Shown piece after piece: positions 1,982 to 39,945 of a DNA stretch of 64,000 nucleotides (positions within the stretch are counted from its first letter, which is position 1; the number at the start of each line of letters is the position of its first letter). The translations under genes were made by a program, and so were the position numbers. The notes under the pieces are model-generated. The model was not told the origin of the DNA. It ran no database searches and saw nothing but the letters and a program-made list of their open reading frames with translations. Location: assembly GCA_964057225.1 (NCBI GenBank), contig OZ059897.1, forward strand, positions 14,632,001-14,696,000. The letters run 5' to 3'. Origin of the DNA: Auanema rhodensis (lineage: Eukaryota > Animalia > Nematoda).

Positions 1982-1985
<4 letters not shown>

Positions 1986-2021
<36 letters not shown>
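1986..2021. repeat. (CT)n microsatellite
   Basis: Direct reading of the sequence. Confidence 0.95.
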
Positions 2022-2028
<7 letters not shown>

Positions 2029-8932: not shown

Positions 8933-11035
8933 TGTTAACTGAAAAAATAATTAAAATAATACTATAGAAGCAGAAAGAATAAGATAAATTAGTAAATTCA
9001 ATTATTTTGATTTAAATTTCAAAAGAGAATTAATGATATCATTAATAATGATAAGATATACTAATACAACAATATGATTTTAATGTGAAATTCTACAATT
9101 CAATTGAATTGGTCAATCATTGATGTCAGACAACATGATGAGGCAGACAGATAAAAGAAACAAAACTGTTGAAATGGCTACTTTATGATGTTGAAAATGA
9201 TGATGAAATGAAATGGCAAGAAATATGAAAAAGGAACAGGTGACAGTAAAAGAGGTGGGCCGACGACGATGATGTTAGGATGAGGTATAAACGGTTGCAA
9301 GGGCTGATATGGTGGCGCAGAGAAGTGAGCAGAAAACCCAAATATCATTCAAACATTTATTTTCAATATACATAGGAAAGGAGGACAATGTATGAACAAC
9401 ATGAAAACAATATTATAATATTTAAAATTATGATTTCATCATCACCAAAAGTTTTGTTGAACAAAAAATTTAAATATGATCGATGTTTATAAACGATTAA
9501 GAGAGTTGAAACGAAGGTGAAGCATGAAAGAAATACGATGAGATGAGGATGAATGAGGATAGAAAGCATGATGAATCGAATTATATAAAGGATGTACAAA
9601 TATAAATATATTTCTCATATTCAATATTCAATATAATTTTTTTTTAAAAATAAACTAAAAGAAAATTTGAAATTTGAAATAGTAATACACATTTTTGATA
9701 ATCTAACAGCTATTTAAGGAGTTTGATACAAACCATTATCACATTCAGTACCATTTCTATATAGAAATATTAATCAATACTATGTGTCACTAATTATAAA
9801 ATATTAATTTATAACTAAATACATATGATTAAAGATATAATTCGTGAATGCATAACTATATGTATAGTTAAACGTATTTTTAAAACATGCCATATAGTTA
9901 AGAATGGGGTGTTTCATGTTGATATCATGTAGCTCAGTGGTAAAAATTAATAAAGTTTATGATGTCCAAAGAATGTAAAAGGAAAGAAAAAGACAATGTT
10001 GCAGAGAGAAATAAAAAAAATGTTCTCTCTCTCTCTCTCACTCACTCTCACTCTCTCTCTGCATATTATCTCTCAGTTATTATCTGATTCTTTAAATCAA
10101 ACTTGTATGACCATTACATATAAAACATTGATTCAGAAGCATTTTCTATTCAAAGAAAATAAAAATATAATGTTCTGATGTTTAATATTGACGGATTTTT
10201 GATAATAATATATCATGAGTGACAGAATAGGACACGTTACTAAGAGTTTGAAGCCTGTTTGCTCAGATGAAAGCATTGACAACACGATTGTGAAAAGGAA
10301 ATGATGAAATAGTTTTATGTATTATGAGAGTTAGACGATCACACAAAGCACAAAACTCATCTCTGAATTCGTTTGCTTCATCTCTGGTAATCTGAGTCAG
10401 ACGGTGATGGAAATTTAACGCAAAAAGTCATCCATCGGCTGTCTTCATCATCCTACTCATGATCGAAATCAGATTCAAAAGAATTTTTATGTAAATTTAA
10501 AGAATAAAATGTTATAGTTAAGTTTTATATAATAAACTTGTTTACAAGCATTATATAAAACAAATAACAAAACAAAGAAATTTGTCTTCAACATAAAAAA
10601 ATAGTTTGTTATCAAACATTATTGATTGATTGTTTGTTTAAAATTATATATACTAATACATATAATAGTATATTATAAAAATAAAAATATAATTAATGAA
10701 TTTGAAAGTTAAAAAATATTATTTGAAAACGTGGAAAGTAATATGTTCAACGTTGAAAATATATTAATTGAGCAAGAAATCGAAACTGCAATAAACTTGT
10801 GCTCTTTACGAAATTAAAACATTGATTGATCTATTTTACAAAGTTGAAAAAATCTTTTTTTTTCTTTTAATTATGAGTCAGAATTAAAAAAAAGAAACAA
10901 ATAGATAAAGCTTTTTCTCATTGAAACTATTTGAAGCTAGAAGTGAAATATAAATAAGTCACCATTTCAAAAAGAGGGAACTTGAGAGATATCAAATGAG
11001 AGAACATGTGAGAGAGAGGGAAAATAGAAAGAAAA

Positions 11036-11110
<75 letters not shown>
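11036..11110. repeat. Interrupted (GA)n microsatellite
   Basis: Direct reading of the sequence. Confidence 0.95.
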
Positions 11111-11113
<3 letters not shown>

Positions 11114-11622
11114 AGTGAATGAACAGGTAGAGAGATGTGGAAGAATGACGAATGTGGAAAAAAGAAGTATGGCTGAGCAAATAGTAAACGTTGGCATCGA
11201 TATCATCTCTTGGTGACCCTGTGTGTCACATCAAATTTAGTATAGATATTATTAAAATATATTTAACAAAAGTAATATTAGTTATTATATTATTTTTATA
11301 AAAAAACATTTAAGTTAAAATATAAATAATTATGTGTATTAATAATGTTTTAAGTATAATAATAAAAAATTTATAATCAGCTTTTCTTTCTTTATCAGTA
11401 TTTTGGAAGAGAAATATCAAAGTTAACAGTGAACTTTGAGAATTTATCAGTTTCTTTCGATATTTAATGAAAACAGAAAGAAATATATTTATTTAAATAT
11501 TAATTTAGATGATATTTTTTAAGATTTCTATTAATATTATTATATTTATGTAAATTTTAACTTTAATTTATGTAAATAAAACATTCCAGTTCTTTATATC
11601 CTATTCTTTATATGTTAAACCT

Positions 11623-12960
11623 TTGTATTTGATTTAATTTTTATAAATTATGTGATATGATAAATAATTTAATTGTAAAATTTATTTATTTTATTATACA
11701 AATATCTTAATTTTAATATAAAATTTATAATAATTAAATATATGCATATTATTAATTGATATTACATAGTAATTAAAAAAAAAATAAATAAGATTGTAAA
11801 CTCTTATGTTATAAATAGATTCATAATCTTAAGATAATTTCTTCTTTTTTTGCGAAAAAATGCAAAAAAAACGGATTTTTAATGTTTTTTCTTCAAAGTA
11901 ATTACTGAGTTATGCAACTTTGTTTTCGAGAGTTACGTGCTTCCTCCAACACTGACTTCTTTCGTCTCTCACATCGAACTTGTTCTAAAGCGAATCGTTG
12001 TCCAGTTGCAAATGAATCTTCAAATACTTCATCCAATCCTTCCTACAAACATTAAAGTTTTGTGTTGAATTATCAACTTGAACGAAATGAACATGAAAAT
12101 TAAAAAACTTACTGCTGTTGTAGCTGAGCATTCCAGATATCGAATTGCTCCTATTTGCTTCGCAAAAATCTCAGCTTGACTTAAAGCCATTGGTTGATCA
12201 TTACTGAAACGGAGGTTCCAATTACAAAACAAAATGTTTTTGTGGAATTTGTTTATAAAAAGAAGAATAAATGTATATGTATATATGAGTATTATCAGGT
12301 GTCAAACGAATTTATAGTATTTTTGAACTCAAAAGTGTTATTTTGGCCATTTTTTGCTTCCTCTTTACAATTACATCAAAGATTAAAAGCTAATGTTTTT
12401 GATATAAATTAACTAAAAATAGATTTTAATGTACAATTTTTTGTTTAAAAAATTAAGAAAAACTAACTCTTCCGATCCTTCTTTTAAATATTTTGTCCTT
12501 TTATCAATTTGAGTACCAACAACAACGAAAGGAACAGTTCCAACATGATCTTTGATTGACATCATTAACTGAAAATAAATTATAAAATTAAATATTATAA
12601 CTATATTATTATAAAATATTTTATTTTATTTAGAATAATGAAGAAAAAAAAACATTTTGTATATTTAATTTGTATTTTTAAAACAAAAAAAAAATAATTT
12701 TTTTATCTCATTTATCACTTTTATTTCTGTTTTTTTTTTCAGAAAAAAAAATCTCCTTCCCTAATATATGTCTTCATGTTATGAACTATGTACATATGTT
12801 TGAGAAATGTTGTTTGATCTTGTCCTCTACCAACAAATCAACTTTGTATCTGATTCTAACAAGAAATATTCCAAACGTATCGTAGCTTATCTTGTTGGCA
12901 AGCAGACGATAATGTGATGAACGAACATCGAAGGAATGAATATTAGATATGAAGCTATAT
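11623..12960 (+). repeat. Direct repeat copy 1 (~1.34 kb) of 21639-22977
   Basis: Visual alignment at offset 10016-10017 shows only ~4 differences (g11631/a, c11841/t, one poly-A indel, c12473/a). The ORF track gives identical translations at 12029/22046 and 12194/22211. Confidence 0.95.
11902..12568 (-). pseudogene. Duplicated 3' half (exons 3-5) of the Cdc42/Rho-like gene, lacking exons 1-2
   Basis: Same exons as 21919-22585 (GTQIDKR, YLECSA, CITQ*). Upstream sequence diverges at 12961. Confidence 0.8.
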
Positions 12961-13143
12961 TAAATTATTTATCATATGACTTCATAAAAATAAAATCAAA
13001 TACAAAGGATTAGCATATAAAGAATAGACTGGAATGTTTTATTCACATAAATTAAAGGTTAAATTTTTATTTTATTGAAAATGTGTTTATATTGAACAAA
13101 AACATGCCATTTTATAAATTTTTTTTTAATTTTATAGGTACTG

Positions 13144-13229
13144 CTGCCAACGATGAGGAGATCGATGCTTTGGAACACATCACATTTGTTTGATGTGTTC
13201 CAAAGCATCGATCTCCTCATCGTTGGCAG
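13144..13229. repeat. Perfect 39-bp-arm inverted repeat with an 8-nt loop
   Basis: ctgccaacgatgaggagatcgatgctttggaacacatca-catttgtt-tgatgtgttccaaagcatcgatctcctcatcgttggcag. Confidence 0.95.
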
Positions 13230-14237
13230 GCGTACCTACAAAATAAAATAAATACATTTCTGTAATCAAAGTAGTAAAATATACAACATTTAAAACTATA
13301 TAAGAATACCGGCATATGCCTCCTCAGCGAGAATGGATCCAGCTGTGCATAGGTTGACATTTGGCGTGGCGAGAGTTTGATTGGGACGCACACTAAAACA
13401 AAAATTTTGAAAGAACTCTAAAAAACCTTCAAACTTCTCAAATAGCAATATTATTTATAAAAGGTTATAAAGTTATAAAAATATACCAGCATGAGCCGCC
13501 TCAGTGAGAATGGGTTCGGCTCGGCATAGGTTCGTTGTAGGATTTATCGCATCGCTTGAATCCTTAATAAATTATTATTCCATCATTAAATGTTTTTGCA
13601 TTAAGTGCTGTAATTTATAATTCTAATAATAGAAAAAAAATCATACCACGTCGACATTTGGCTTGCCGAGAGTTTGATTAGGACGCACACGAAGTAAAAA
13701 AAAATTTAAAAGAACTTCAAAAAGCTTTTAAACTTTTCCAATATCAATATTATTTATAAAAGGTTATAAAGTAGAAAAGAAAAGTTTATTCAAACCTGTT
13801 TGCAGGGTAAGCTTAGCATGAATTTCTCGGATCACTGCAAGAAGAATGCCTATGACAACTGCTTGAGTTGGAAAGTCCATATCGATTTGCCTAAACGGAT
13901 AAAAGGGTTATGAGTTATGTAAAAAAGACAATTAACATGTGAAACCAATTATTAAAGCAATTAAATAATGTTAAAAATAAAATATTCACTCACTTCGATC
14001 GCACAATTTTCATAACGCGATCATACAAATATTCAATAGCCAGAGCATCAGCCTAAAATTATATTTTCATTAAAAATATAAATATGTACATACAAAACTT
14101 CAAACAATAATAGTTCAACTTACCGAAATAAAATGAGAAGCCATCAACAAGGAACCCCGAGCACGCAATCTGTAAAGATATCCAATGAAATTTAAATGAT
14201 TAAATGATGAAATAATGGAAAAACTGCCCCCGTCCAT
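13182..14237 (-). other. Small multi-exon orphan gene or pseudogene with internally duplicated exons
   Basis: Short GT-AG-bounded segments read ...LLMASHFIS / ADALAIEYLYDRVMKIVRS / QIDMDFPTQAVVIGILLAVIREIHAKLTLQT / DSSDAINPTTNLCRAEPILTEAAHA / VRPNQTLATPNVNLCTAGSILAEEAYA / TPANDEEIDALEHIKQM*. 13357-13490 and 13653-13775 are tandem paralogous. Frame continuity is uncertain. Confidence 0.4.
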
Positions 14238-14399
14238 GTTATATGATCACTATTACAAAAATAATAAATTATTTCTTCGAACAATATCATATATTGTAGA
14301 AGCACCGAAAAAAAAATCTCTTTTCTATTCACAAAAGTCAGAATGTGGTGGAAGAATGTAACTAGTGTCGCGTCGCATGCGCATAGTTCAATTTGAAAG

Positions 14400-15034
14400 A
14401 GATCTTTTAGAAAAAACTTTTCAAATCATTGGAAATTAATCTCTTCTCAACTTATTCAGATAAAAAAGTGTTAAAAGATTTAACAGAACTCTTGAAGAAA
14501 AAATGTGGAAAATTTTTACTCTTCAAGGAAATCATAGGACTGATATTCTTGATGATGTAATTCAAGGATATAATAATCATTATCACTCATTCATAAAAAT
14601 GACTCCCACACAGAAAATAAAGGAATAGTTTACAGTAATTTATTTCCCAAGTAGAGAAAATATAAAAAGAAATAAATACAAATTTTAAGTTAGGTGATAC
14701 TGTAATAATAACTAAGTGTAAAGCTATTTTCGATAAAGGTTATTTACCAAATTGAAGTACTGAACAATTAAAAGTTTCTGAAGTTCATCTATTCTCAGAA
14801 GGACCAATTATGTATTCTATTAAAGATCTTGCATATGAAGAAATAAAAGGTAAATTCGATGAAGAAGAACTAATACTTTACAATAATGTTACTCAGGAGT
14901 ACAAAATCGAAAAAGTGATAAAACGTAGAACAAGAAAAGAAAATGGAAAACCATTCAAAGAGTTACTAGTCAAGTGGTATGGATATCCAGATAAGTTTCA
15001 TTTTTGGATTCCTGCTGATGATTTAAAATCTTAA
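14400..15034 (+). mobile_element. Degenerate Maverick/Polinton retroviral-type integrase C-terminus with chromodomain
   Basis: RFNRTLEEKMWK...DILDDVIQGYNNHYHSFIKMTP...GDTV...FDKGYLPN*STE...YKIEKVIKRR...LLVKWYGYPDKFHFWIPADDL, with stops and frameshifts. Confidence 0.85.
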
Positions 15035-15074
15035 GAATCAAACGCTTATTCAATTTTATTCAAAAATCTAGGTG

Positions 15075-15640
15075 TATTCTTTACACTGCCAACCTTAACT
15101 CGATTATCTTGACTTCAACAATATTTTCACTCAAAATAAGGCTGTAACATTTAGTACTTTTGAGGAATATTGTAACATCAGGTCTACTTTTAATAATTAT
15201 ATCATTTTGTTCTGATACATCAAATACTAATAACGGATAATAATATTAATAAACATCTTCTTCAATGAAAATATAATCTTTGACTGATTCGTAATAACTA
15301 TTTCTGAATTCTTTAGCAAAATTGTATATTTATCAAAGTCAAACTTCAGACATTCATATGGATACCTTTCTGAATTTTGTTCAACATAGATTTCTTCTAG
15401 CCCACAATTATCGAAACCCATAATTACCAAGTAAATTATCGATAACCATTAAGATTGCTCTACCAAATAGAAACATTGGAGCATTATTAGTCAGAGAGAC
15501 TTCATCAGTGTCACTTAATGCACTAGAGTCTGATTTATTCACCGATGTTTCTAAATTAATATAAGATTTATGAAAGAGAAGGTATTGATCACAAGTTTCA
15601 TTAATAAAATTAATTTCTCCATGCTGATTTAAACTAGAAC
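15075..15640 (-). mobile_element. Internally deleted Maverick/Polinton major capsid protein remnant
   Basis: N-terminal-like SYINLE...LTNNAPMFLF joined to C-terminal-like FDNCGLEEIYVEQNSERYPYECLKFDF and VFDVSEQND...CYSLILSENIVE, motifs I recognise from Polinton double-jelly-roll capsid proteins. Adjacent to the integrase. Confidence 0.65.
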
Positions 15641-16003
15641 CCTATGAAGGAAAAATGATTATTGTATTTTTTTCTTATCGAAATAAAGGAAAAGAAATAT
15701 ATTTCAAAAAATATTTTGACATTTTTGATAAAATAGGAATAGACTATTAGGCTTTTCTGCATTTCTTGCCACCAACTATTCATAGCAATTATAATGCAAA
15801 GTTCTTAGCGGTTGAAGGTGCAAATTAAATTTTAATTTTTTTGTTCATTTGTTGTATTAAGATAGTCATCTGTCTTTGCAAACCATTGTATCTTTCATAT
15901 ACTGGTGGAGTTATGAGATGACCACCATCAATTTCTGTGAAGTTCAACTACGAATACGTTTGTTCTGACATAATCAGAAATTGAAGAGAAATTATATAAA
16001 AAC

Positions 16004-16183
16004 TTTAATATTTTTGAATTTTTATTAAAGAATACGTGAATGTTCACGTGAAAATCATTTTTTATTGTTTTGTTATTACCATTTTTTTTATTTTTCAATC
16101 TCACACCTTTGTGAATCAGTTGTTTCTGATTATTTAAAATAAATAATTCTAATATATTTTATGTTCCTTGTTTAATCAAGACA
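16004..16183. repeat. Dispersed element-associated repeat; inverted copies at 19578-19658 and 20402-20522
   Basis: 16004-16070 is the near reverse complement of 19590-19658, and 16062-16183 is the near-perfect reverse complement of 20402-20522. Confidence 0.85.
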
Positions 16184-16334
16184 TAAAAATGGTGCAGCGG
16201 TAAAATAGCCGATCAAAAAATAACAAAAAAAAATAATTAACGTTCATAAGTTAAAAGAGATACCGTAATAAGACAGGAATTCAAAAAAGAATTGTCAATA
16301 CACTTGCAAAAAGAGAAGAATTACTGTATGTACT

Positions 16335-19300
16335 AGTAGAGAGCCATGCCGAATTTACTAACCACGCCCCCAAACAGTTGCTAAAAACATACTTTTGAGG
16401 GCGTCAGCTGTCAAAATCATACTTTTCATCAAGAGGCAGGCTCTCGAGCCTGCGCATGGATCAAAATGCATGATATTTTAAAAATTTATATATTTTCTAA
16501 ATATTTTTAAAATTATTTCTTTTTAAATGTGTTTTTAAAATTACCAGATAAGACTACTTCTGACCTCATCATCGTTTAGACATTTCATCTGTTTATCAGT
16601 TACTGATTGTATTAAATCTATTCCTTTATGCTCAAGAGGTCTACTAGTATGTGCTGAGTCTTCAGTCTAAATTACCTGAAAATAAAGGAAAAGCTTGTAG
16701 AAGATCTTATCAGACCTATGCTGTGACAGTACCGAAGAGTATAAAGCCTATGAATATTAAAACAACGATTCCCCCCTTTCTGTATTACCCCTTATCTCTC
16801 TGTCTTTCTCACTCGTTCTCCCTCTTTTACGATTCGTCTCTCTCTATATCTTGTTATCTTTCTTTTATATCCTTTTATCTCTTGTCTAAGATTCTTTCCA
16901 CCTTTTGCAGCCATATTATTAAATGCAAAGAAAGTAACCATAATACTAGTTATTATAATCTATGCTACACAATCATAGTTAGTGTTTCAACTCAGCTGAA
17001 TCTTTTCTGTTTTAGTGTGTCTTCTCTCATATCCATTTTTCTAATACCAACTATATGTGAGCACCTTATCTAAAGAAAACTTGTTCGGCCAATTTAGTCT
17101 TGTTTTGGTTTTTTTATTGTCTAGTATTGTGTAACTCATAAAAGTTTTGATTATTTCTGTTCCAGCACCTAATTTTTTATTTTGTACTTGACGGCTATTG
17201 CATAAATCTGATAATACAAATAGTTAAATATATCTTAAGTGCATCCAGCTTACGATAATAATTAGAAGAGCATGAAGATACAAACCAGTAATCCAATTTT
17301 GTAATTTTTCTTAAATCTGTTTCCAACATTTTGTTTGAAACGTACATTGAATGCAGACCGCTATCAACGGCTCAGCTTACGACCTTGTCTATTGTCCAGA
17401 TAGCACAGTTCCTGAAGCTAAAGGCTGGTTCATTGTTTGCTCATACGGTATAGGTGCGAGCACTTTGATATTTGGAATTTACTGTTCACGTCTGATGATT
17501 AACATATTAACAGATGAATATGGATCCTTTATTAAATATATTTATGTTTATCATATATCTTGTATGATATCCGGAATAGTCGTTTCATTATTTGGGGTAA
17601 TAATAAGTAAAATAGTCAAGAAATATGAATTAGATTTAGGCTCCAGTATATTATCTGCCACTGTTGTCTGGATATAGCATAGGTTTTTGGAATTATCTAT
17701 CCCTTCCACTTTTATATCAAACATATATTAATATTTTTCTTCATTTTGCTGGATATGCTATCTGTATCATGTTGTTTTTCTATCGATATTGGATAGTTCG
17801 AGCAGGAAACTACGATAGTAGATCTTGGATATTTCGTTTGGGAGTTATAGTAATAAGCCTGACATCTGTTGTTCCATTATTAATCGTTATGATTTTTATT
17901 CCGCATGATTTATCCAGTTTAGACAGTTTGGTTAAAGTATGTTTTGAGAAAAACTGTTCGAAATCTTCTCTTCTAGTCATGTCCAGCTTATTCTACACTT
18001 CTGAACATTCCAAACGCAGCTAATATAGGAAGATATCACAATGAATTTTTTCTTCGAATGGATCTCATTTTATTTTTTATAATTTCTGTACTTTTCATAA
18101 TATCTTTATTCGTTCTAAAACACTTAATTATAAGTAATTTGGATGAACAAAAGTTATCAATGTCTCAGAAGACATTATTGCTTCATCGAAAGCTACTTCG
18201 AGCTCTTCAGTTCCAGGTTATTTTATGACAATTTAATCATATTATTGTAACCAAAAAGATGTTTGAGGTGCAAAACAAAAATTGCGATTACAATCTGAAT
18301 GAATATACTAGAAAAGACAGATAGTGTGATATATTCAAAACAGAGCAAATTATATTCGATAAACTCTATAAACTTTTCAGCAACTGAGAAAAAAAAATTA
18401 AAATTGTATTCAAAGCACAAATGAAAATTAAATGATCCCTAAACGAACAATAAAATAGCCTAAAAGTATAGAATAACATTGTATGGGTTCGTAATGTGTT
18501 CTTTTCTATTCTGAAACATAAAACACCGCATTCTCTTATACATAGACGTAATATTTATAATTAATTTAAGGCTTTTGTTCCAAGTAGCTTTGTAGCTGGT
18601 CCAATTGTAATATTCTATATTATTTTGTATTTCGATATACCAGTACCTCTAGGTTTCACAATGTACTTTAAGTGAAATATTTAAATAAATTTCAGAAATT
18701 TCCCATTTATTGATTACATGTACACAATTGCATGGAATAGCTAATACAATAGGGATTATAGTTCTTAATAATACTTTATTAACTCAATTCATTCAAGGTA
18801 TTCTGAATATATTTTCAAATAACAAGCAGATTCCATTTAGATTTTCTTAATCTAGTGGGTGTCAAGGAACAATTTGTTCTGAAATCATCATTTTCTACGG
18901 TTCTGAAATTATCATTTATATCAAAGGTTTGGCGTTTGTCCACAGATTCATCTAAATTATTTTAAATTTCAGAAATCATCTACACTAACAACAACTCATA
19001 GTACTGTTCATCCAATTTAAGTTATTTAGTTATTTACTCATGCATTATTTATATTATTTTTATGGAATTATAATTATATTCTTCTAGCTGATTTACTGTA
19101 GTTGTGTTTTTGACGTTGGTTTAATCCTACACCCAAACTCCGATATTAACAATAAGCTGTCAAACAACCTGGAAATTGCTTTGTAATGTAAGACGGAAAT
19201 GATGAATTAACTATAAATAACAGTCAACTTAGAACTTATTCTATTATATGTAATAAACAATTTAAATACCGAATTATAGCTGTCACTAGCCATACAGAAA

Positions 19301-19820
19301 AATATGAAATCAAGAATAATATAAAGCTTCGAGTTTTTCTCAGAAATCATCAACTAAAATCAAATAAAAATAATTTGAGGTTGGGTATTCAGATGTGTAG
19401 AATCTGAAATTCCTAGTGAGATTTGGCTATGACTTCTGATTTTTCCGTAAATACGGTTTATACCGAGACCATCCACAAGGTTTGTTCACAAAGAAGTTCA
19501 GGCTGTGGTCACGTTGTGCCCAATGAATGTAAAATTAGAATTATTTATTATTAATCATCGGGAACAACCGATTAACAAACGTGTGAGATTGAACAATAAA
19601 AAATGATTTTCACGTGAACTTTCACGTATTCTATAATAAAAATTCAAAAATATTAAAAATATTTCTTTATGAAAAGTATATTTTTGACAGCTGACGCCGA
19701 AAATATGATTTTGACAGTAGACGCCCCCAAAAGTATGATTTTGACAGCTGACGCCCTCAAAAGTATGTTTTTAGCAACTGTTTGGGGGCGTGGTTAGTAA
19801 ATTCGGCATGGCTCTCTACT
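16335..19820. mobile_element. Non-autonomous Maverick/Polinton-type element (3486 bp) carrying a chemoreceptor gene
   Basis: Perfect ~91-bp TIRs (16335-16425 / ~19730-19820) starting AGTAGAGAGCC and ending GGCTCTCTACT. Flanks TGTACT (16329-34) and TGTATT (19821-26) form a 6-bp TSD with one mismatch. ~30-bp subterminal tandem repeats at 19672-19780. Confidence 0.8.
17351..19020 (+). CDS. Srh/Str-superfamily 7TM chemoreceptor, apparently intact, 7 exons
   Basis: Exons 17351-17596, 17640-17936, 17977-18216, 18571-18652, 18696-18797, 18841-18926 and 18973-19020 splice in frame. Motifs APVYYLPLLSGYSIG, FFYRY, MSQKTLLLHRKLLRALQFQAFVP, QLHGIANTI. Confidence 0.85.
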
Positions 19821-20043
19821 TGTATTCGAAGAAAATTTTGTAGAAAAAAGAGAATTTTTATGAATATTTAAAAGATTATTTGACAAGATTCTCCAATTTA
19901 ATGGAAAAAACTATAATATTGAGAAACGATGTAAATTTTCCTGAGATAATGGATAGTTCAGAAAAGTCAATAATCATTGAAAACTGGAAAAATCTTAAAA
20001 AGGAAATAAGAGAATTTGTAAAAATCGGTCAAATAAAAATAAA

Positions 20044-20565
20044 AAATACCTAGTAGAGCAGGCTATGGTTCATTAGTGTGTGTGTGTGGAATACCTTTAT
20101 AACTTTTCCAACAGTCGGAAATTATGGTTGAACCTCCCTTATTGACTCTCTGATACAAGCTACGAGAGTTTCCTTAGTTCGATCGGGGACAACATAGATG
20201 AAACATTCTTTGGTTTCGCGGCATACACTACCAAAGACCCAAGTTTGCTTCTTCAGGCGTACTACGTTGTATTTCCTTCTCGAAACTAAGCTCTCATCCA
20301 CTTCTACAGCCACCAATTTCTACGGGAGGATTTCTAGGAGACGCCAGGCACACACTTCTCGAAGAAAATTATTATAATCAACAGTAGTGTGGTGTAAACG
20401 TTGTCTTGATTAAACAAGGAACATAAAATATATTAGAATTATTTATTTTAAATAATCAGAAACAACTGATTCACAAAGGTGTGAGATTGAAAAATAAAAA
20501 AATGGTAATAACAAAACAATAACTTTAGGCAGTTAATAAACCTTAGCCTGCTCTATTAGGTATTT
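20044..20565. mobile_element. ~520-bp element bounded by ~32-bp imperfect inverted repeats containing AGTAGAG
   Basis: aaatacctagtagagcaggctatggttcatta (20044-20075) versus the reverse complement of 20534-20565, aaatacctaatagagcaggctaaggtttatta. No direct TSD seen. Confidence 0.6.
20090..20395 (-). pseudogene. Merlin (IS1595/ISXO2-like) DDE transposase fragment
   Basis: TVDYNNFLREVC...VEVDESLVSRRKYN...WVFGSVCRETKECFIYVVPDRTKETL, then a frameshift to GSTIISDCWKSYKGI. Confidence 0.85.
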
Positions 20566-20639
20566 GTTTATACTAAATTTATTCTATCATCATTACAAAG
20601 ATAATGAATTCTTTCCTCGAAAAGAACAAAAATTTTGTG

Positions 20640-21638
20640 CTCAATGACATTAGAAGTGATACTTCAGTCAAAATATTTTTGAAACAGAGTTCAGACAAAA
20701 GAAGGACTCCATAGAAGCAAAATTTGCTGTAAGATTGAAAACTAAAGAGCTGTATTGGTGAAGATCGAGAAAAATGGTATCAACATGCATGTCAAGAATT
20801 ACAAATGAATATGGAAAACATACAAACATGTGGATCAGGTTGGATTATTTCAGGAAGCAATTATCTCCAAATGGATAAAACTATTTGTAATTCACTTGAT
20901 GGAAGTAAATATATTGATCTACCTGATTGGATAAAAAATAACAAAGCTGTGATAAATGGAAAAAACAATGATGATAAATGTTTTATGTGGTCTGTACTAG
21001 CTCATCTACATCCTGCAGAAGATCATGTTGAAAAAGTTTCTAAGTACATACCTTTTGAGAATGAATTGAAGTTTGATGACCTCAAGTTTCCTATGAAAAT
21101 TAGAGATATTGATAAACTGTAAAAGATGAATGATCTTGTGGTTAATGTTTTCAAGTGTTGTCAAAGAAGCGGTGTCATCGATCGTTTACGTCCTTCAAGA
21201 AAAATCATTAGAGATACTAACAGAATTGTCAATCTTTTGTATCATGAAGACAATAAAGGAAATTCACATTACTCTCTTATTAAAAATCTCAATAAATTAC
21301 TCAACAAACGAGGTTGTCATCAGCAACAATTTTGTATACACTGTCATTCTCCTCACAGCAATAAATTTAAATATGATAGACATATCGAGGATTATGGTAG
21401 AAACAAGCAGAACATAAATTATCGAAAAAAGGAGTAACGAAAAAAAAGAACATCAGCAAAACTCAGAAACATCGCTTTGTTGTATATGCTGACTTTGCAT
21501 AATTTGAAAATTTAGTACTGTTTTATATGATCCATCAGAATCATGGACTATGGATGTTGGAAAACATATTGCAGCTGGATTTTATGTCATTGTTGTGGAC
21601 TCATTCACCGAAAAGATACATAGCATTAAGTCATATCA
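20640..21638 (+). mobile_element. Degenerate N-terminal region of Maverick/Polinton protein-primed DNA polymerase B
   Basis: GSGW...LDGSKYIDLPDWIKNNKAVINGKNNDDKCFMWSVLAHLHP...LKFPMKIRDI...HYSLIKNLNKL...FCIHC...FVVYADF. Contains stops and is truncated at the direct-repeat boundary. Confidence 0.85.
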
Positions 21639-22977
21639 TTGTATTTAATTTAATTTTTATAAATTATGTGATATGATAAATAATTTAATTGTAAAATTTA
21701 TTTATTTTATTATACAAATATCTTAATTTTAATATAAAATTTATAATAATTAAATATATGCATATTATTAATTGATATTACATAGTAATTAAAAAAAAAA
21801 TAAATAAGATTGTAAACTCTTATGTTATAAATAGATTCATAATCTTAAGATAATTTTTTCTTTTTTTGCGAAAAAATGCAAAAAAAAACGGATTTTTAAT
21901 GTTTTTTCTTCAAAGTAATTACTGAGTTATGCAACTTTGTTTTCGAGAGTTACGTGCTTCCTCCAACACTGACTTCTTTCGTCTCTCACATCGAACTTGT
22001 TCTAAAGCGAATCGTTGTCCAGTTGCAAATGAATCTTCAAATACTTCATCCAATCCTTCCTACAAACATTAAAGTTTTGTGTTGAATTATCAACTTGAAC
22101 GAAATGAACATGAAAATTAAAAAACTTACTGCTGTTGTAGCTGAGCATTCCAGATATCGAATTGCTCCTATTTGCTTCGCAAAAATCTCAGCTTGACTTA
22201 AAGCCATTGGTTGATCATTACTGAAACGGAGGTTCCAATTACAAAACAAAATGTTTTTGTGGAATTTGTTTATAAAAAGAAGAATAAATGTATATGTATA
22301 TATGAGTATTATCAGGTGTCAAACGAATTTATAGTATTTTTGAACTCAAAAGTGTTATTTTGGCCATTTTTTGCTTCCTCTTTACAATTACATCAAAGAT
22401 TAAAAGCTAATGTTTTTGATATAAATTAACTAAAAATAGATTTTAATGTACAATTTTTTGTTTAAAAAATTAAGAAAAACTAACTCTTCAGATCCTTCTT
22501 TTAAATATTTTGTCCTTTTATCAATTTGAGTACCAACAACAACGAAAGGAACAGTTCCAACATGATCTTTGATTGACATCATTAACTGAAAATAAATTAT
22601 AAAATTAAATATTATAACTATATTATTATAAAATATTTTATTTTATTTAGAATAATGAAGAAAAAAAAACATTTTGTATATTTAATTTGTATTTTTAAAA
22701 CAAAAAAAAAATAATTTTTTTATCTCATTTATCACTTTTATTTCTGTTTTTTTTTTCAGAAAAAAAAATCTCCTTCCCTAATATATGTCTTCATGTTATG
22801 AACTATGTACATATGTTTGAGAAATGTTGTTTGATCTTGTCCTCTACCAACAAATCAACTTTGTATCTGATTCTAACAAGAAATATTCCAAACGTATCGT
22901 AGCTTATCTTGTTGGCAAGCAGACGATAATGTGATGAACGAACATCGAAGGAATGAATATTAGATATGAAGCTATAT
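21639..22977 (+). repeat. Direct repeat copy 2 of 11623-12960
   Basis: See copy 1. Confidence 0.95.
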
Positions 22978-24893
22978 AGGAATGTCTGAGGATGGTCCAA
23001 TTTCTCACGTCATCTGATTCCTCTAGTGTTGCTTCTTTCTGTATTCTATTTTTCATCTTTTTTTTCCTTTTTTTCTTCTTTCTCCTTCTTTTATTCGTTG
23101 ATAATTTACTAGTATCTCATCTATTTAGTTTGTCATTTTATATACAAAAAAAAGCAAAATGGCTATAGAAATTGTAGTATGTATCATGTATGAAAGCATC
23201 AAAAAGATTTCAAAGATCAGATATAGCCTAGCCACATCACCAGCATCAGTCTACACGTCATCTTTTCATGTGTAGTTGTGGACAATCGCGTTTTGGATAT
23301 AGAATTAGCTTACTATTTACATTTAAAGTTAATTCATTGAAATTGTGAATAATCAAGAAAGAAAAGAGTTCTTTATCATCATTTTTATGGATTTATTAGG
23401 ATTATATATGGCTATTTGAGGATAAAACTCAAAGTTTTAGTAAATAAAACCTGATTATTATAATTTATAATCAAATCGTATATTATATTTTAGTTTATAT
23501 ATAACTATTTATATGTAAATTATATTAAATATTTCAATATATATTGATTGAATGAGAGAAATATGAAATATGATTCCAAATATAGAAATGTTTGTTTTTC
23601 TGAAACAAAGCATAAAAGACAATTAATATAAAAATATATTGGAAAATAGAGATGTTTTTTTCAGATAAAAAAACCTTTTTTTTCATAAAAGAAATCGCTA
23701 AACAGGTTAAAATATTATTATTTTAGTTTAAATATTCAAAAAATATAAAAAGAAGAAGAATATAACAAATTATTTGAATAAATTCTTTTTTTATTTTTTT
23801 GTTAATCAAAAATAATATTAATATTCAATATATGTATGTATTTACATCCTGAATCAAGTGTTTCAATCAAAAAAAAAACATAAATTATGAGTTATATGAA
23901 CATTCTCATAACCAAAACCTCCATTAACTGACGATTCTTTAGAACAATGCTTCATTGCTTAGATATTTCAATTTTTTTATTTTTCTTTTAGATTTTTCCC
24001 ATCAAAATTTTGAATCTGCAGGGCCTGAAGTGAGAAGTAAGACAGAACATAGAGAGGTGACGGATTATAAATGTTTCAGAATGAGTGATGAACGACACGT
24101 CATCTGAATTTTCATCGTCCAATACATAATCTGTCGTTCTTCATCTGACTTAAAAAATCATTTTTCATGAGCTTCTGCTTATCCTCTTTCGATATATTCC
24201 CGTTCATTTTTTTCTTTCCTTTTTAACTTCAATTCTTTAAGTTTAACAAGGCTTTACACAAAAATATTTGCAACTTAGCAAGAGAGAAACAGGTTTTAAG
24301 TTTATTTTATCGGCTATATATAGAGAGATGAAATTAATTTTTTTTATAATAAAGTTTATATGAGTAATCAGAAAAGTTTTATGTATATCTTAGACTTTGT
24401 TCCCTGTTTACTATTGTTAATATATTCAAAAAAATATTTAATCAAAATAAAAATGAAATATTCATCTTTTCTTTTTTTTTTTTTGAAAATAAATGTTAAA
24501 GTAACATACAGATCTGATAGATTCCTGAACCAATGCTTGACGAGCAACTGATACACAGAGAAGATAGACATGAACATCATTCGAAGGACTTTGATTCTCA
24601 TCACGACATGAATCAAAATCTACAAAAATACATTTCTGTCCATTGAAAGCTGTGACCATATCACCCATCTATAATAGTTAATTATAATAATAATATAGTT
24701 TATAATTAAAAACAAACAAACAAATAAAAGAATTTTTTCTTTTCAAAATATGAAAAAACAATGTAGTATATACCTCAGAGTTGAATGATAATCCATTGAT
24801 ATCAGCATATCTTTGAATCATCTCCAGCTTTTCAGAATCATTGTCACCCATAACAACACATTTGACGATTGGAACATCAGTTAGGATAGTCAT
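21919..24893 (-). CDS. Divergent Cdc42/Rho-family small GTPase-like protein, 5 exons
   Basis: MTILTDVPIVKCVVMGDNDSEKLEMIQRY...VHVYLLCVSV...VGTVPFVVVGTQIDKR...FAKQIGAIRYLECSATTAEGLDEVFEDSF...RKQSCITQ* (CaaX). Exons splice in frame. Confidence 0.85.
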
Positions 24894-25993
24894 ATCTTTA
24901 AAATAAATTCTGTTTATTCAATTCTTTGTAATTGATAAGAAATATTTAGTAAAATCAAATATTTTAAAAAGGCAATGAGATTTTTATTTCGTATTTCTTC
25001 ACAACGAAGTGAAAAGAATATGTTCTGAAAATGTTTTTTCCTGAGAAAAAACAAAGAAAGATGAAACATAGTAAAATTATTGGAGAAGAATTGGTGGGAA
25101 AAGGTTTATATGAGAACAAACTAATGGAAGAGGTAATGCTAGTTGAATGAGCTGAGTCTAGAATTGCAAAACCAATTATAAGATTTTTGAGATCGGCATG
25201 TATGGTTTTTCTTTGTTTTTTTTCTTTTCTCCACCTCTCTCTCTCTCTCTCTCTCGCTCTCTCGCTCTCTCTCTCTCTATATATCAATCTTATTTTTCTC
25301 TCTTTCACTATGAACTCTTTTGTTTCATTTTCTTTCTTTTTTTATATATTTATTTAATTCATTTTTGTATGTACTCCTTATATTCACTTTGACAATATGC
25401 AAGAATGTTTTTACTATAAAAAAACATTTGTTTTATATATTTCTTGATCTTAAATTATTTTCTCATTTTCATATATCTTTAACTTAACCAATAAACAAAC
25501 TATAAATAGTCAAAATGTAGTGAAAGACGGTATAAAATAGAAAAATTGAAAAGTTTTTTTCTCGCAACAACATAAGAATATGTAACCGACAACTATCTTT
25601 ATAACAAAGACCACCATGAAAAAGGAAGAAAATACAAAAAAAAAGAGGAAATGGAGTGATAGACGTAGACTATTCTTAGAAAATAATTATGAGAAAGTTT
25701 TTTTTCTGTTCAAATGTTATAATTAAGAGGGTGGTTGTGTGGAAAAAAAATATCTAACTGGGAAAGAAGACAAGAAGAAGTATGTGAAATGTGAATGAAA
25801 CGTATGAAAACGACAGGAAAAGAAGGTGATTCCAATAAACTATAGAGAGGATGGAATTTGAGAAGAAGAAAATACGTAAATCGGAAAAGGAAGAGAACTG
25901 CATTAACTAAAGTTGATATTTCGACAATATAATTATATGATTTCCATTATATAAATGGTTTGAGATTGAAGATTGAATAGACTACCATTACTC

Positions 25994-25995
<2 letters not shown>

Positions 25996-26042
<47 letters not shown>
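25996..26042. repeat. (AG)n microsatellite
   Basis: Direct reading of the sequence. Confidence 0.95.
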
Positions 26043-26045
<3 letters not shown>

Positions 26046-27944
26046 GTTTTTTAAAAAAATTTATAATCTTTTTTCTCTGTTATTCTAAGAAAATAAGGCC
26101 ATATGAGTTTAAACTTTTTTTCTGTTATTTGTTAGTCAGACTGTTTTAACATAAACATTTAAAATTAGAAACTGCAAAATGACTTGAATATAGTGAAAGA
26201 GCAAAATGGGAGCAGAAGAGTCGACTAGATGATGAGAATTTAAGACAAAAAAGACAAAGGAACGATACATTCTAAGCCAAAATGCCAACGCTAGATGGGA
26301 GACTCCGCCTCTAGGGGATGAAGTCAGATATACCATGACACAGCACCGGAATAGAAATATGCTTGTTACTTCCAAAAATAGAAGAACAAAACATTTATTT
26401 GGCATTCGAAATTGAGTCAAAAATAGAATGAAAAACTACTTGCTGAAAGTTCATGAAAATGAAAGATAAAGAGAAGATATGTGAGAATATTCTTGATATT
26501 GATGCAGATGATGAAGATGTTGATGTATATGTTGATAATACGATGAAAAGAAGTCGTTGAAAACGAAAAAGACAATTTTAAAGTTGAAAGGTTCTTCCTA
26601 TTTTTGGTTGTTGGTCGATCGTCATGATGTCATGCCGGCAAAAGATGGCTGTATTGCTAAGCTGTTTGATGTTAAGCTTTGCCTTTGTCTGAGTATGCAG
26701 AGTATGCTCTATATCTGACGTTCATCCTGCATCAAACAGCAACATGTGTTTCTGCTTGTAGATCTTGGAATCACAGCATTATGTATTGCTGACGTATAGT
26801 TAGAAATCAAATAACATCTGTACAATTGTTGTAACTCTCGATAATCCTGTTGCATCTCAGTTGTCATATTTCCTTCAAAACATATAAATGGGCTTTGCAA
26901 TAATTGAAAGTATTCCCCCAAAATAAATTTAAATTTTTCAAATAAATTTTAACAGTTTTGTAATTTTTTGAACTTTTGACCTGAAAATGTGAAAGGAATC
27001 ATCTAAAACTTGATGTAATTGCACATTGTCGTCATCACAAATTCTGAGTTAAAGGCTATTGACAGCATTTTGCTAGATCGCGTATTACTTAAAAGTAAAT
27101 TGAAGAGAGAATGAAGGAATTCAAGAGGCTAGTATTTAGTTTTTCGAGAGAAAATAGAACTAGAGGAATTCCTCAATTTCCTTTTTATTAGTCGAAAACG
27201 GAAGCATAGAATGGGGGAAGTCCTCTCGTTAACGTCAATGATTCGAATGCAATGAGTTGTAATTAGCACGTAGATGTACAAGCATATGTTGCAAGTCGTT
27301 TTCTGATTTTTCAGCAAAAAATTATGCAAAAAAACATGTAATAATTGATGAAGCATTGTATATGCAATGTTTAAAACGTTTTTTGAAAGGCTATTATCTG
27401 TAATATTTAAATAAAATCTTGCTACTTATATGAATATTATAAATGAATTTAATTTTATAAAATGATCTGTAGAACAAAAACAAAAGACTAAAAGAACGAT
27501 AGATTATCAAATTTATACATGTTCATATGAACAGATAATCTTTTATAATATATCTATATCTATCTTAATATGTAAAATAAATTTAAAGTTTATAAGTTAT
27601 CAATGATTAAGCTGGAAGAGCTGACCATATACAAGAAAATAGCTTTCACGTGAAATGACTTAAACAATCAAAATCAATCTGAATCTAAAAATCTTTTATT
27701 GAAGATTTTAATGAACTTGTTAGCTTTTTACTTCAATTTCATTTGTCTTATCGAAAATTTCTTTTTTTTTCATCAAAAAAAAAAAACAATTGTTCAATAG
27801 TAAGAGAGAAAGATTTATGGGAAAGACTAAGGTGAGAAAGCTGAACGAATGACCGAAGAAAGAAAAATCTTATAGTAGTTTCTGACGTCAAAATTCTAGG
27901 AAAAGCTTTTTAAAATGATCACTTATCCATTTGGAGTAGCCATA

Positions 27945-28170: not shown

Positions 28171-28895
28171 GACATAGAAGATCTTAAACTGACAAAAAAC
28201 ATATTACTAAGTAAAGTTTTAACTAAGTCAAATCTGGTGCTAAACAAGAGATGATTGAGCATTATACTCGTGAGAACTAAAGTTTTTAAACTTTTATTTA
28301 GTTCAAATCTGGTTTTGATTGCTTTTCGATAAACTAAGTATAAATGGTCTGAGATTTTATGAAAAGAATTGAATTGAATAAGAGAAATAAAAGAAAATTA
28401 AAAAAATTATATACATGTATATATATAGTATAAATATATATATATATATAATAAGCTTTATAATATATAAAATAAAAATATTATATAATAAATATATTTC
28501 TCACACATGTATAATCTTTTTGAATTGAAATAAATTCAAAATAATCTTATTTTCTCTTAAAACGATTTGAAAGAAATATAGAATAATAGAAAAGAAACAT
28601 TTTTCTTCTTCTTTTTCTTTTTTTTTAAATAAATGAAATAATAAAAACAAATATTTTAATATAATTATGATAGAAGAAAGGAAGTGGTAGAAGAAACAGA
28701 ATAATTTGAACGGAAAAGAGAAGATGAATGAAAATAAAAAAAAAAGGAAAATGAACACCTCATCATTCAATATAATTACCAAATGAATGTTAGTTACATC
28801 TATATATGACATCATCAACGATGATGATGATGATGATGATGATATTCAAATACTGAGAAAAGACAAAAAAAAGGAATTTTTGAATTTCAAATGAA

Positions 28896-28898
<3 letters not shown>

Positions 28899-28933
<35 letters not shown>
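28899..28933. repeat. (GA)n microsatellite
   Basis: Direct reading of the sequence. Confidence 0.95.

Positions 28934-28938
<5 letters not shown>

Positions 28939-31424: not shown

Positions 31425-31427
<3 letters not shown>

Positions 31428-31507
<80 letters not shown>
31428..31507. repeat. (TC)~40 microsatellite
   Basis: Direct reading of the sequence. Confidence 0.95.
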
Positions 31508-31511
<4 letters not shown>

Positions 31512-39025: not shown

Positions 39026-39395
39026 AAATCTTAAAAATAAAATATAATAATTTAATATTTTACTAACTATATGCATATATTTTAACCAAAATTTAATATA
39101 ATATAATCGTGTATTACTCATTTCTATGTACCTATAATATTTATATATTTTGTGTAGATTGATAGAGCTAGATAATTGAATATATTGCGACTTAAATTTA
39201 ATGAAAAATCGGAAGAAATATTCAATCAGTTAGTTTTTATGAATATATTTTCTAAATTTCAATATTTTTTGGTTCAACATGTTAAAACAGGGCAAAACTT
39301 CGTAAAGATCTTTAGATAATAAATAATATTTTTTGAATTTATAAATAAATATAATAAATGTATAGTTAATAGAAATATTAAAATAAGTTTTGAAA

Positions 39396-39460
39396 AGAAG
39401 AACAGAGTTTCTTTTTGTGTTTTTTATTAAAACAAACACAAAAAGAAACTCTGTTCTTCT
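39396..39460. repeat. Perfect 27-bp-arm hairpin between the two srsx paralogs
   Basis: agaagaacagagtttctttttgtgttt-(11 nt)-aaacacaaaaagaaactctgttcttct. Confidence 0.9.
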
Positions 39461-39945
39461 TAGTAAATTGACCATAATTAACTATTCAATAATATTTAAT
39501 ATAAATTACAGAATTTATATAGTATATATTCAAATATTACATATACAATTTAAATAAAATATGTGAACCGCGTGACCGAATAACAGCAACTGAAGATGAA
39601 ATATACAATTATATTTAAAATATAAATATTTGCAATGTTAATCATATCACATATCACATTTTTGATATAGTTAATACCAATTTATAACCAGCATAAGCAT
39701 ACTATATGAGTATATGATTCATATTATTTGAATTTCTTATAATTTAAAGTTGTAATTATTTGAATAAATTATATTTTGCATCATAATAATTATGTTTACC
39801 CAATTATTAATTTTCTTCATATTTTTTTCATAAATTTGTATATTTTATTCCATAATATTTTCTTTCTTATCATATATTCATCTTATGGATATGTATGTTC
39901 TTATAATATCTAAAAATAAATATATATAAATTCAAACAGTTAAAT

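What the first reader, a model, noticed from the sequence alone, without database searches (positions are those of the whole stretch)
16329..19826. Mini-Maverick carrying an intact, intron-containing chemoreceptor gene as its sole cargo
Seen: perfect ~91-bp TIRs with 5'-AG...CT-3' ends, a 6-bp TSD with one mismatch (TGTACT/TGTATT), ~30-bp subterminal tandem repeats, no element-encoded ORF, and a full 7-exon Srh-type GPCR with ~900 bp of upstream sequence. Established: AG...CT termini with 6-bp TSDs are Maverick/Polinton hallmarks, and nematode Mavericks are known to move cargo genes, including between species. Inference: this is a Pack-MULE-like non-autonomous Maverick that captured a host chemoreceptor at the DNA level and could spread it in trans, which would be a route for chemoreceptor family expansion or horizontal transfer. 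I do not know of this specific arrangement being described.
Basis: partly seen in the sequence, partly recalled or inferred. Interest (0 to 1): 0.9.

Follow-up and report, generated by a model that had tools for sequence, protein, structure and literature searches.

The report
Chemoreceptor gene inside a small transposon
A 3.5-kb mobile-element-like unit with identical inverted ends carries one complete-looking nematode smell-receptor gene; its ends look like those of virus-like Maverick transposons, but that link is not proven from this one copy.

Summary
Window 16335-19820 is bounded by 92-nt inverted ends that are 92/92 identical. Its flanks are TGTACT / TGTATT (5 of 6; chance about 1%). 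It has 30-nt subterminal repeats, about 2 on the left and 4 on the right, and no detectable transposon protein inside. The only recognisable gene is an intron-containing Str-superfamily (Srh/Srj-like) chemoreceptor with consistent splice phases.

The Maverick reading is only partly supported.
- For: the ends read AGT(AG)3 ... (CT)3ACT, close to published Maverick end motifs. The layout matches nematode Mavericks with the INT-to-polymerase core removed. Polymerase-like, chromodomain and weak capsid-like remnants lie just outside the element.
- Against: the left junction TACTAGTA is a palindrome, so an 8-bp duplication (7/8) or a TA duplication fits as well as the 6-bp one. No copy of these ends sits next to a polymerase or integrase gene. 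The end sequence occurs only here in the window. The neighbouring Merlin-like element shares a 7-mer and an internal module with it.

One copy cannot show whether it ever moved as a mini-element or lost its core in place. I left out scans that could fetch animal virus-like elements. Verdict: real, unusual, classification open. Interest 0.5.

The parts
16329..16334 (.). Left flanking repeat TGTACT (6-bp reading of the target duplication)
   Evidence: It matches 19821-19826 at 5 of 6. It overlaps the palindrome TACTAGTA (16331-16338), which allows an 8-bp or TA reading.
16335..16426 (+). Left terminal inverted repeat, starting AGTAGAGAG
   Evidence: 92/92 identical to the reverse complement of 19729-19820.
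16375..16434 (-). Left subterminal 30-nt repeat units (about 2), overlapping the inner part of the inverted repeat
   Evidence: (D11, I6).
16435..17350 (+). Spacer upstream of the receptor (presumed promoter region). It includes a CT-rich stretch like those in host intergenic DNA.
   Evidence: D1 copies at 16776-16884. No protein family hit. GC 0.31.
17351..19020 (+). Str-superfamily (Srh/Srj-like) chemoreceptor gene. Exons: 17351-17596, 17640-17936, 17977-18216, 18571-18652, 18696-18797. The 3' end is either 18973-19001 (6-exon model) or 18856-18926 plus 18973-19020 (7-exon model).
   Evidence: GT-AG borders, phases consistent, no stops. Srh profile 63-152 and 188-238 are collinear. Six strong and one weak hydrophobic segments.
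19021..19533 (+). Spacer downstream of the receptor, content unknown
   Evidence: No Pfam, Rfam or tRNA hit.
19534..19657 (+). Module B ('R-ext'): the internal right-end module, also present outside the element (A, C)
   Evidence: 87-97% identical to the reverse complement of 16004-16170.
19670..19786 (+). Right subterminal 30-nt repeat units (about 4)
   Evidence: (D2, I20).
19729..19820 (-). Right terminal inverted repeat, ending CTCTCTACT
19821..19826 (.). Right flanking repeat TGTATT
16004..16183 (+). Neighbour: module A, a copy of R-ext in inverted orientation, 151 nt left of the element
   Evidence: 99% identical to C over 122 nt and 87-97% identical to B.
20041..20568 (.). Neighbour: element Y. 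It has 35-nt inverted ends (89%) that contain AGTAGAG, a broken IS1595/Merlin-like DDE remnant on the minus strand (20063-20319), and module C (20402-20522).
   Evidence: I8; PF12762, E 0.004, below cut-off.
20742..21645 (+). Neighbour: broken, 3'-truncated polymerase-N-terminal-like remnant
   Evidence: Twelve relatives match 20742-21419. One is named DNA-directed DNA polymerase by UniRef and one is C. briggsae CBG03969. No Pfam hit.
14200..15031 (+). Neighbour: broken integrase-like remnant ending in a chromodomain (domain at about 14900-15031). Only the chromodomain is supported by tools.
   Evidence: (Chromo, E 1.8e-8). The catalytic core was not detected.
15230..15641 (-). Neighbour: broken ORFs with a weak double-jelly-roll-like match
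   Evidence: PF21738, E 2.5e-4, 20.8 bits, cut-off 27.

Best explanation
The unit 16335-19820 is a cargo-only derivative of a Maverick/Polinton-type element. What remains is two identical ends, a short repeat-bearing subterminal region, and the cargo slot, which holds a complete host-type chemoreceptor gene with its own upstream region and introns.

Shown:
- It entered this site as one piece: outward-facing identical ends plus a flanking duplication.
- It encodes no mobility protein.
- The receptor reading frame is open, with consistent splice sites.

Inferred:
- The ends are Maverick-type, that is, substrates of a retroviral-like integrase that leaves a 6-bp duplication.
- The receptor was taken up at the DNA level into the cargo slot of a full element, beside one end and with its 3' end toward that end, as in nematode Mavericks.
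- One deletion then removed the integrase-to-polymerase core.

Whether that deletion came before the insertion (a true mini-element moved by proteins of a full copy) or happened here afterwards cannot be told from one copy.
For: - Ends 92/92 identical and unique in the window.
- Flanks match at 5 of 6, chance about 0.011.
- The ends read AGT(AG)3 // (CT)3ACT. Vertebrate Mavericks carry (AGT)2//(ACT)2 or (AG)3//(CT)3, 6-bp duplications and inverted ends of 46-1447 bp (PMC8097293). Nematode Polintons have ends of 100-1500 bp and duplications of 5-8 bp (PMC10748475).
- Nematode Mavericks hold a 2-5 kb region with intron-containing cargo genes between one end and the integrase, and the cargo's 3' end faces that end (bioRxiv 10.1101/2022.07.12.499685). 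Here the receptor's 3' end faces the right end and the whole interior is 3.3 kb.
- There is no transposase or virus protein signal inside.
- Polymerase-N-like, chromodomain and weak jelly-roll-like remnants lie within 1-2 kb on either side, so elements of this kind have been in this genome.
- Module A, homologous to the element's internal right-end module, lies about 0.55 kb (net of the two insertions) from the start of the polymerase-like remnant and points away from it. That is where an end of a polymerase-bearing relative would be.
Against: - The left junction contains the palindrome TACTAGTA. An 8-bp duplication (7/8, ends GAGAGCC) and a TA duplication (ends C[T/A]AGTAG) each fit with one mismatch too. 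The 6-bp hallmark is therefore not diagnostic.
- No polymerase or integrase gene is seen between a pair of these ends. The terminal 169 nt have no significant match near A, near C or at 13.0-14.3 kb.
- Tandem 30-nt subterminal repeats are typical binding-site arrays of cut-and-paste transposons.
- The neighbouring element Y, with a Merlin/IS1595-like DDE remnant, shares AGTAGAG in its ends (6 occurrences in 64 kb, 3 of them at these ends) and shares the R module.
- The end-motif comparison rests on vertebrate Mavericks. I have no nematode end sequences.
- In Caenorhabditis Mavericks the polymerase's 3' end faces the terminus, unlike the geometry suggested by module A.
Confidence: 0.45

Rival explanations
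1. It is a non-autonomous cut-and-paste DNA transposon of Pack type, moved by a DDE transposase encoded elsewhere, which acquired the receptor gene by gap-repair or template switching. The true duplication is then 8 bp (TACTAGTA / TACTTGTA) or TA, and the resemblance to Maverick ends is coincidental.
For: - The 8-bp reading matches at 7 of 8 and the TA reading is exact.
- There are 30-nt subterminal repeat arrays at both ends.
- The adjacent element Y has a DDE remnant (PF12762, E 0.004), shares AGTAGAG in its inverted ends, and carries the same R module in its right subterminal region.
- Another unit with inverted ends in the window (11552-13067) also holds gene-like exons.
Against: - No transposase with matching ends is in the window.
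- At the 8-bp boundary the ends (GAGAGCC) do not fit the hAT terminal pattern, and a 9-11 bp Mutator-type duplication is absent.
- Y's own ends extend beyond AGTAGAG, so the shared 7-mer is at a different distance from the tip.
- Pack-type elements usually carry gene fragments rather than a whole gene with about 0.9 kb of upstream DNA (my knowledge).
- Module C in Y is 99% identical to A and is best read as local filler, not as a family trait.
Confidence: 0.3
2. It is not a mobile unit. The receptor sits at its native locus, bracketed by two independent leftover ends after separate insertions, deletions or rearrangements. This would resemble the host gene eri-6 of C. elegans, which became flanked by Polinton end-derived repeats.
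For: - The region 11.5-23 kb is a patchwork of nested and rearranged repeats: a 1339-bp duplicate at 99.7% and modules A, B and C.
- There is a precedent for host genes bracketed by Polinton ends through multiple insertions (PMC11414722).
- Other GPCR genes lie 19-22 kb away.
Against: - Each side has a single arm, with the tips facing outward.
- The arms are 92/92 identical, and the outer flanks match at 5 of 6 (or 7 of 8), which two independent events would give with a probability of about 0.01 or less.
- The immediate neighbours are transposon remnants, not receptor paralogues.
Confidence: 0.1
3. It is an assembly artefact in a repeat-rich region that created the inverted pair.
For: Several near-identical repeats (99-100%) lie within 10 kb.
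Against: The two arms differ in the number of 30-nt units and are joined to different unique sequence. An artefact would not be expected to produce a matching flank duplication.
Confidence: 0.05

Closest known systems
Cargo-carrying Mavericks of nematodes (Widen et al.; bioRxiv 10.1101/2022.07.12.499685)
   Same: Inverted ends. A slot of 2-5 kb beside one end holds host-like, intron-containing genes, with the cargo's 3' end toward that end. DNA-level carriage of whole genes.
   Different: Those elements are 15-20 kb and encode polymerase, integrase, capsid, ATPase and protease. This one is 3.5 kb and encodes none of them. The reported cargo is wasp proteases and krma kinases, not chemoreceptors. 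Shared ends with a full copy are not shown here.
Pack-MULEs and other Pack-type non-autonomous DNA transposons
   Same: Inverted ends around captured host DNA with introns, and no transposase of their own.
   Different: A 9-11 bp duplication is not present here. They usually carry fragments, often from several genes, whereas this is one whole gene with its upstream region. No MULE transposase relative was found in the window.
Polinton end-derived repeats bracketing eri-6 in C. elegans (PMC11414722)
   Same: A host gene lying between sequences derived from Polinton ends.
   Different: That arrangement arose by several insertions and inversion, gives direct repeats, and is not a unit bounded by a duplication. 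Here the ends face outward with a flank duplication.
Merlin / IS1595-like transposons (neighbour Y)
   Same: Y shares the 7-mer AGTAGAG in its ends and the R module. An 8-bp duplication is one possible reading for X.
   Different: X has no DDE remnant. Y's tips lie further out than the shared 7-mer. The DDE assignment of Y is itself below the Pfam cut-off.

Membership tests
Maverick / Polinton | [quoted passage not shown] | tested here: not met
   No hit inside 16335-19820. A polymerase-N-like remnant lies outside at 20742-21645.
Maverick / Polinton | Encodes a retroviral-like integrase | tested here: not met
   None inside. A chromodomain-ending remnant lies outside at 14200-15031.
Maverick / Polinton | Encodes capsid, packaging ATPase and protease genes | tested here: not met
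   None inside. Only a weak jelly-roll-like match outside.
Maverick / Polinton | Terminal inverted repeats of about 50-1500 bp | tested here: met
   92 nt, identical.
Maverick / Polinton | 6-bp target site duplication | tested here: inconclusive
   5 of 6, but 8-bp (7/8) and TA readings fit as well because the junction is palindromic.
Maverick / Polinton | End motif of AG or AGT repeats (5'-AG ... CT-3') | tested here: met
   AGT(AG)3 // (CT)3ACT under the 6-bp reading, compared with the motifs quoted. The comparison set is vertebrate.
Non-autonomous derivative of a Maverick | Ends shared with a full, polymerase- and integrase-bearing copy in the same genome | not tested
   Only two copies of the end are in the window. 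Scans outside the window were left out (see referred steps).
Pack-MULE | 9-11 bp duplication and Mutator-type ends or transposase relative | tested here: not met
   No 9-10 bp duplication at any symmetric boundary. No MULE protein signal in 1-41 kb.
hAT / Merlin (8-bp duplication families) | 8-bp (8-9 bp) duplication | tested here: inconclusive
   TACTAGTA / TACTTGTA matches at 7 of 8. At that boundary the ends do not fit the hAT terminal pattern (my knowledge of that pattern).
Tc1/mariner | TA duplication | tested here: inconclusive
   TA is present on both sides, but then the second base of the ends differs. TA is frequent in 27% GC DNA.
Nematode Str-superfamily chemoreceptor (Srh/Srj/Srd) | Match to the family profiles above the curated cut-off | tested here: met
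   Exon 2: Srh 36.1 bits (cut-off 26.3). Exon 3: Srj 32.4 bits (24.1) and Srd 28.7 bits (22.8).
Nematode Str-superfamily chemoreceptor (Srh/Srj/Srd) | Open, spliceable frame with seven membrane segments | tested here: met
   GT-AG borders and consistent phases over exons 1-5, with two open 3' models. Six strong and one weak hydrophobic segments. This was checked exon by exon only.
Nematode Str-superfamily chemoreceptor (Srh/Srj/Srd) | Expressed and functional | not testable with these tools
   No expression data. No relative at E <= 0.001 among 1.84 billion representatives.

The most novel reading that the evidence does not exclude
A miniature, gene-free Maverick derivative whose only content is a working chemoreceptor gene. 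It would have been copied to this site by the proteins of full Mavericks. Virus-like elements would then be a route by which nematode chemoreceptor families gain members within a genome, or even across species.
Probability: 0.18. Interest if true: 0.75.

Novelty: new variant of a known kind. Interest (0 to 1): 0.5.

Why it matters
Nematode chemoreceptor families are very large and turn over fast, and their growth is usually put down to local tandem duplication. Mavericks are known to carry a few kinds of host-like genes between nematode species. A receptor gene sitting as the only content of a unit with Maverick-like ends would add a new cargo class and a new, stripped-down form of the carrier. 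It would also make two questions directly checkable in genome data: whether such units are copied, and whether receptors travel with them. My literature searches found no paper pairing Mavericks or Polintons with chemoreceptor cargo, and none describing non-autonomous, cargo-only derivatives in nematodes. One study notes the apparent absence of non-autonomous Polintons in a lizard genome (PMC3014272). If the ends turn out to belong to an ordinary cut-and-paste family, it is still a clean case of whole-gene capture, though a less surprising one.

Tried and rejected
- **Exact look-up of the exon-1 open frame in public assemblies:** not on record.
- **Whole-library search with exon 2:** no protein at E <= 0.001. 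Receptor paralogues, and through them more of this genome, could therefore not be reached.
- **Rfam and tRNA scans of 13-23 kb and of the window:** nothing relevant.
- **Sensitive local alignment of the terminal 169 nt** against the DNA left of A, right of C and at 13.0-14.3 kb: no score clearly above shuffles.
- **Pfam on all open frames of 33 aa or more** inside the element and in both flanks: no polymerase, integrase-core, ATPase or protease family.
- **PDB sequence search of the integrase-like piece:** nothing.

Considered and rejected:
- The 1339-bp direct repeats as LTRs of a retrotransposon. The chromodomain piece is on the wrong side, and the repeats carry GTPase-like exons.
- A composite of two complete small elements. 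Each side has one arm only.
- An auto-integration product of one Maverick. The orientation of the tips does not fit.
- A hAT reading with the usual terminal pattern. That boundary has no matching 8-bp duplication.

Species identity could not be established. The best relatives of neighbouring remnants are 69-76% identical, from unnamed read assemblies.
Full report
**1. What is there**

The window is AT-rich (about 27% GC). It carries nematode-only receptor families (Srh, Srj, Srd, Srx) and short introns of 40-43 nt with GT-AG borders, so it is nematode DNA. The species could not be named.

At the reported place, two arms (16331-16426 and 19729-19824) are 96 nt long and 99% complementary. From AGTAGAG inward they are 92/92 identical (16335-16426 and 19729-19820). 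A 34-nt probe of the end occurs exactly twice in 64 kb and never in shuffles.

The six bases outside the ends are TGTACT and TGTATT. Five or more matches out of six are expected in 1.1% of cases by composition and occur in 1.2% of equally spaced pairs in this window.

A 30-nt unit is repeated about twice inside the left end and about four times inside the right end. This difference explains why the arms stop being symmetric after 92-100 nt.

**2. The cargo**

Five exons have GT-AG borders and consistent phases and contain no stop: 17351-17596, 17640-17936, 17977-18216, 18571-18652 and 18696-18797.

The 3' end can be closed in two ways. One is a last exon at 18973-19001. The other is two exons at 18856-18926 and 18973-19020.

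Searched one at a time, exon 2 matches Srh (36.1 bits, profile 63-152). Exon 3 matches Srj, Srd and Srh (Srh profile 188-238). These matches are above the curated cut-offs and collinear. Exons 1, 4 and 5 are too short to score alone. Six strong and one weaker hydrophobic segments are spread over the exons as expected for seven helices.

Exon 2 found no protein at E <= 0.001 among 1.84 billion representatives, and the exon-1 frame is not on record. The receptor therefore has no close relative in the collections, and this genome appears not to be in them. Its GC and third-position GC (0.32 and 0.25) lie within the range of host genes in the window, so composition gives no sign of foreign origin.

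Nothing else inside the element matches a protein family, an RNA family or a tRNA.

**3. Is the duplication really 6 bp?**

It is not uniquely so. The left junction reads TG-TACTAGTA-GAGAG, and TACTAGTA is its own reverse complement. Three readings fit, each with one mismatch (and direct reading):

| Reading | Duplication | Match | Ends |
|---|---|---|---|
| 6 bp | TGTACT / TGTATT | 5/6 | AGTAGAGAG |
| 8 bp | TACTAGTA / TACTTGTA | 7/8 | GAGAGCC |
| TA | TA / TA | exact | differ at their second base |

My rough count of the coincidences each reading needs gives similar odds for the 6-bp and 8-bp readings. On its own, the duplication therefore does not identify the superfamily.

**4. What speaks for Maverick-type ends**

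- Under the 6-bp reading the tips are AGT(AG)3 and (CT)3ACT. Vertebrate Mavericks have (AGT)2//(ACT)2 or (AG)3//(CT)3 tips, 6-bp duplications and inverted ends of 46-1447 bp (PMC8097293). Nematode Polintons have ends of 100-1500 bp and duplications of 5-8 bp (PMC10748475).
- Nematode Mavericks carry a 2-5 kb region with intron-containing genes between one end and the integrase. In a circular form, one end joins the 3' end of the polymerase gene to the 3' end of the cargo gene (bioRxiv 10.1101/2022.07.12.499685).
- The present unit has that layout with everything from integrase to polymerase missing: right end, about 0.7 kb, receptor 3' end, receptor, about 0.9 kb, left end.
- One deletion of the core from a cargo-bearing element explains it more simply than capture by an already small element.

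**5. The surroundings**

The element lies in a patchwork of transposon remains.

- **To the right (20742-21645, + strand)** is a broken and 3'-truncated remnant with twelve relatives, all matching 20742-21419 in one frame. They include one named DNA-directed DNA polymerase by UniRef, C. briggsae CBG03969, and spider proteins. It has no Pfam hit. I know this N-terminal region from memory as the part that precedes the polymerase domain in Polinton-type polymerases, and that remains a lead. The stretch supported by relatives holds one in-frame stop. The possible continuation needs at least two frame changes. The polymerase domain itself is absent.
- **To the left, first remnant:** an integrase-like remnant that ends in a clear chromodomain (E 1.8e-8). 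Its catalytic core is not detectable. It has at least two frame changes and several stops.
- **To the left, second remnant:** two overlapping frames with a weak double-jelly-roll-like match (E 2.5e-4, below the cut-off), implying at least one frameshift.

Elements of the Maverick kind have therefore probably been in this genome, but all of these genes lie outside the unit.

**6. Links between the unit's ends and its neighbours**

A module of about 180 nt (A, 16004-16183) lies 151 nt left of the unit. It is homologous to the internal right-end module B (19534-19657; 87-97%, one 26-nt gap) and 99% identical over 122 nt to module C (20402-20522).

C sits inside element Y (20041-20568). Y has 35-nt inverted ends (89%) and a broken DDE remnant that weakly matches IS1595/Merlin (E 0.004, with rve and DDE_3 close behind). 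From memory, its motifs are those of ISXO2-like transposases. Y has at least one frameshift and a large internal deletion. I read C as filler copied from nearby A when Y lost its interior. This is inference.

A points away from the polymerase-like remnant and lies about 0.55 kb from its start, once the two insertions are set aside on paper. That is where the end region of a polymerase-bearing relative could be. This is the only in-window hint that the unit's end family belongs to such an element. However, the outer 165 nt that would prove it are absent, and in Caenorhabditis it is the 3' end of the polymerase gene that faces the terminus.

Y's ends also contain AGTAGAG. The 7-mer occurs six times in the window, three of them at these ends. 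In Y it lies further from the tip. These links are unexplained and keep the cut-and-paste rival alive.

**7. Verdict**

The unit is real and entered as one piece. It carries a complete-looking receptor gene and nothing else recognisable.

| Explanation | Probability |
|---|---|
| Maverick-derived | 0.45 |
| Pack-type cut-and-paste element | 0.30 |
| Native gene bracketed by leftover ends | 0.10 |
| Assembly artefact | 0.05 |

One copy cannot show that it ever moved in the small form. With 92/92 identical ends the insertion is recent, and the core could have been lost here afterwards.

Noticed in passing
window 20041-20568: A small element (Y) with 35-nt inverted ends (89%) around a broken, internally deleted IS1595/Merlin-like DDE remnant on the minus strand. 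Its ends contain the same 7-mer AGTAGAG as the finding's ends. No clear target duplication was found.
   Followed up: partly
window 16004-16183, 19534-19657, 20402-20522: Three copies of a module of about 120-180 nt lie within 4.5 kb: A outside the finding, B inside its right end, and C inside Y. A and C are 99% identical and inverted. A and B are 87-97% identical with a 26-nt gap. Origin unexplained; C may be filler copied from A.
   Followed up: partly
window 11623-12960 and 21639-22977: A 1339-bp direct duplicate at 99.7% identity, 10,017 nt apart, brackets the whole transposon patch. It carries Rho-type GTPase-like exons on the minus strand. The right copy cuts off the polymerase-like remnant. 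A possible first exon with an altered P-loop lies at 24681-24917 (minus strand).
   Followed up: partly
window 11552-13067: The left copy of the duplicate sits between inverted arms of about 115 nt (82% identical). It looks like a second unit with inverted ends holding gene-like exons. The left edge of the duplicate falls inside the left arm.
   Followed up: partly
window 14200-15641 and 20742-21645: Broken remnants lie on both sides of the finding: chromodomain-ending integrase-like, weak double-jelly-roll-like, and polymerase-N-terminal-like. The closest relatives are 69-76% identical, from unnamed read assemblies. One relative is C. briggsae CBG03969.
   Followed up: partly
window 13117-13254; 13353-13480 and 13650-13778: A 135-nt perfect-hairpin-like palindrome scores below threshold on two plant miRNA families and is probably a small foldback element. 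Two direct copies of a 130-nt unit (85% identical) lie next to it.
   Followed up: no
window 38507-41398: Two Srx/Srsx-like receptor genes lie head to head. Their homologous exons form a 149-nt inverted repeat (75%).
   Followed up: no
window 41814-42137 (-), 48556-48963 (-): Ordinary host genes lie further right: an AP-endonuclease-like exon and a ubiquitin-specific-protease-like exon. Both were read by eye only.
   Followed up: no
window 1962-2090, 11003-11133, 25211-25321, 25963-26065, 28857-28951, 31403-31575: Many long (GA)n/(CT)n microsatellites. A CT-rich stretch of the same kind lies upstream of the receptor inside the element (16776-16884).
   Followed up: no
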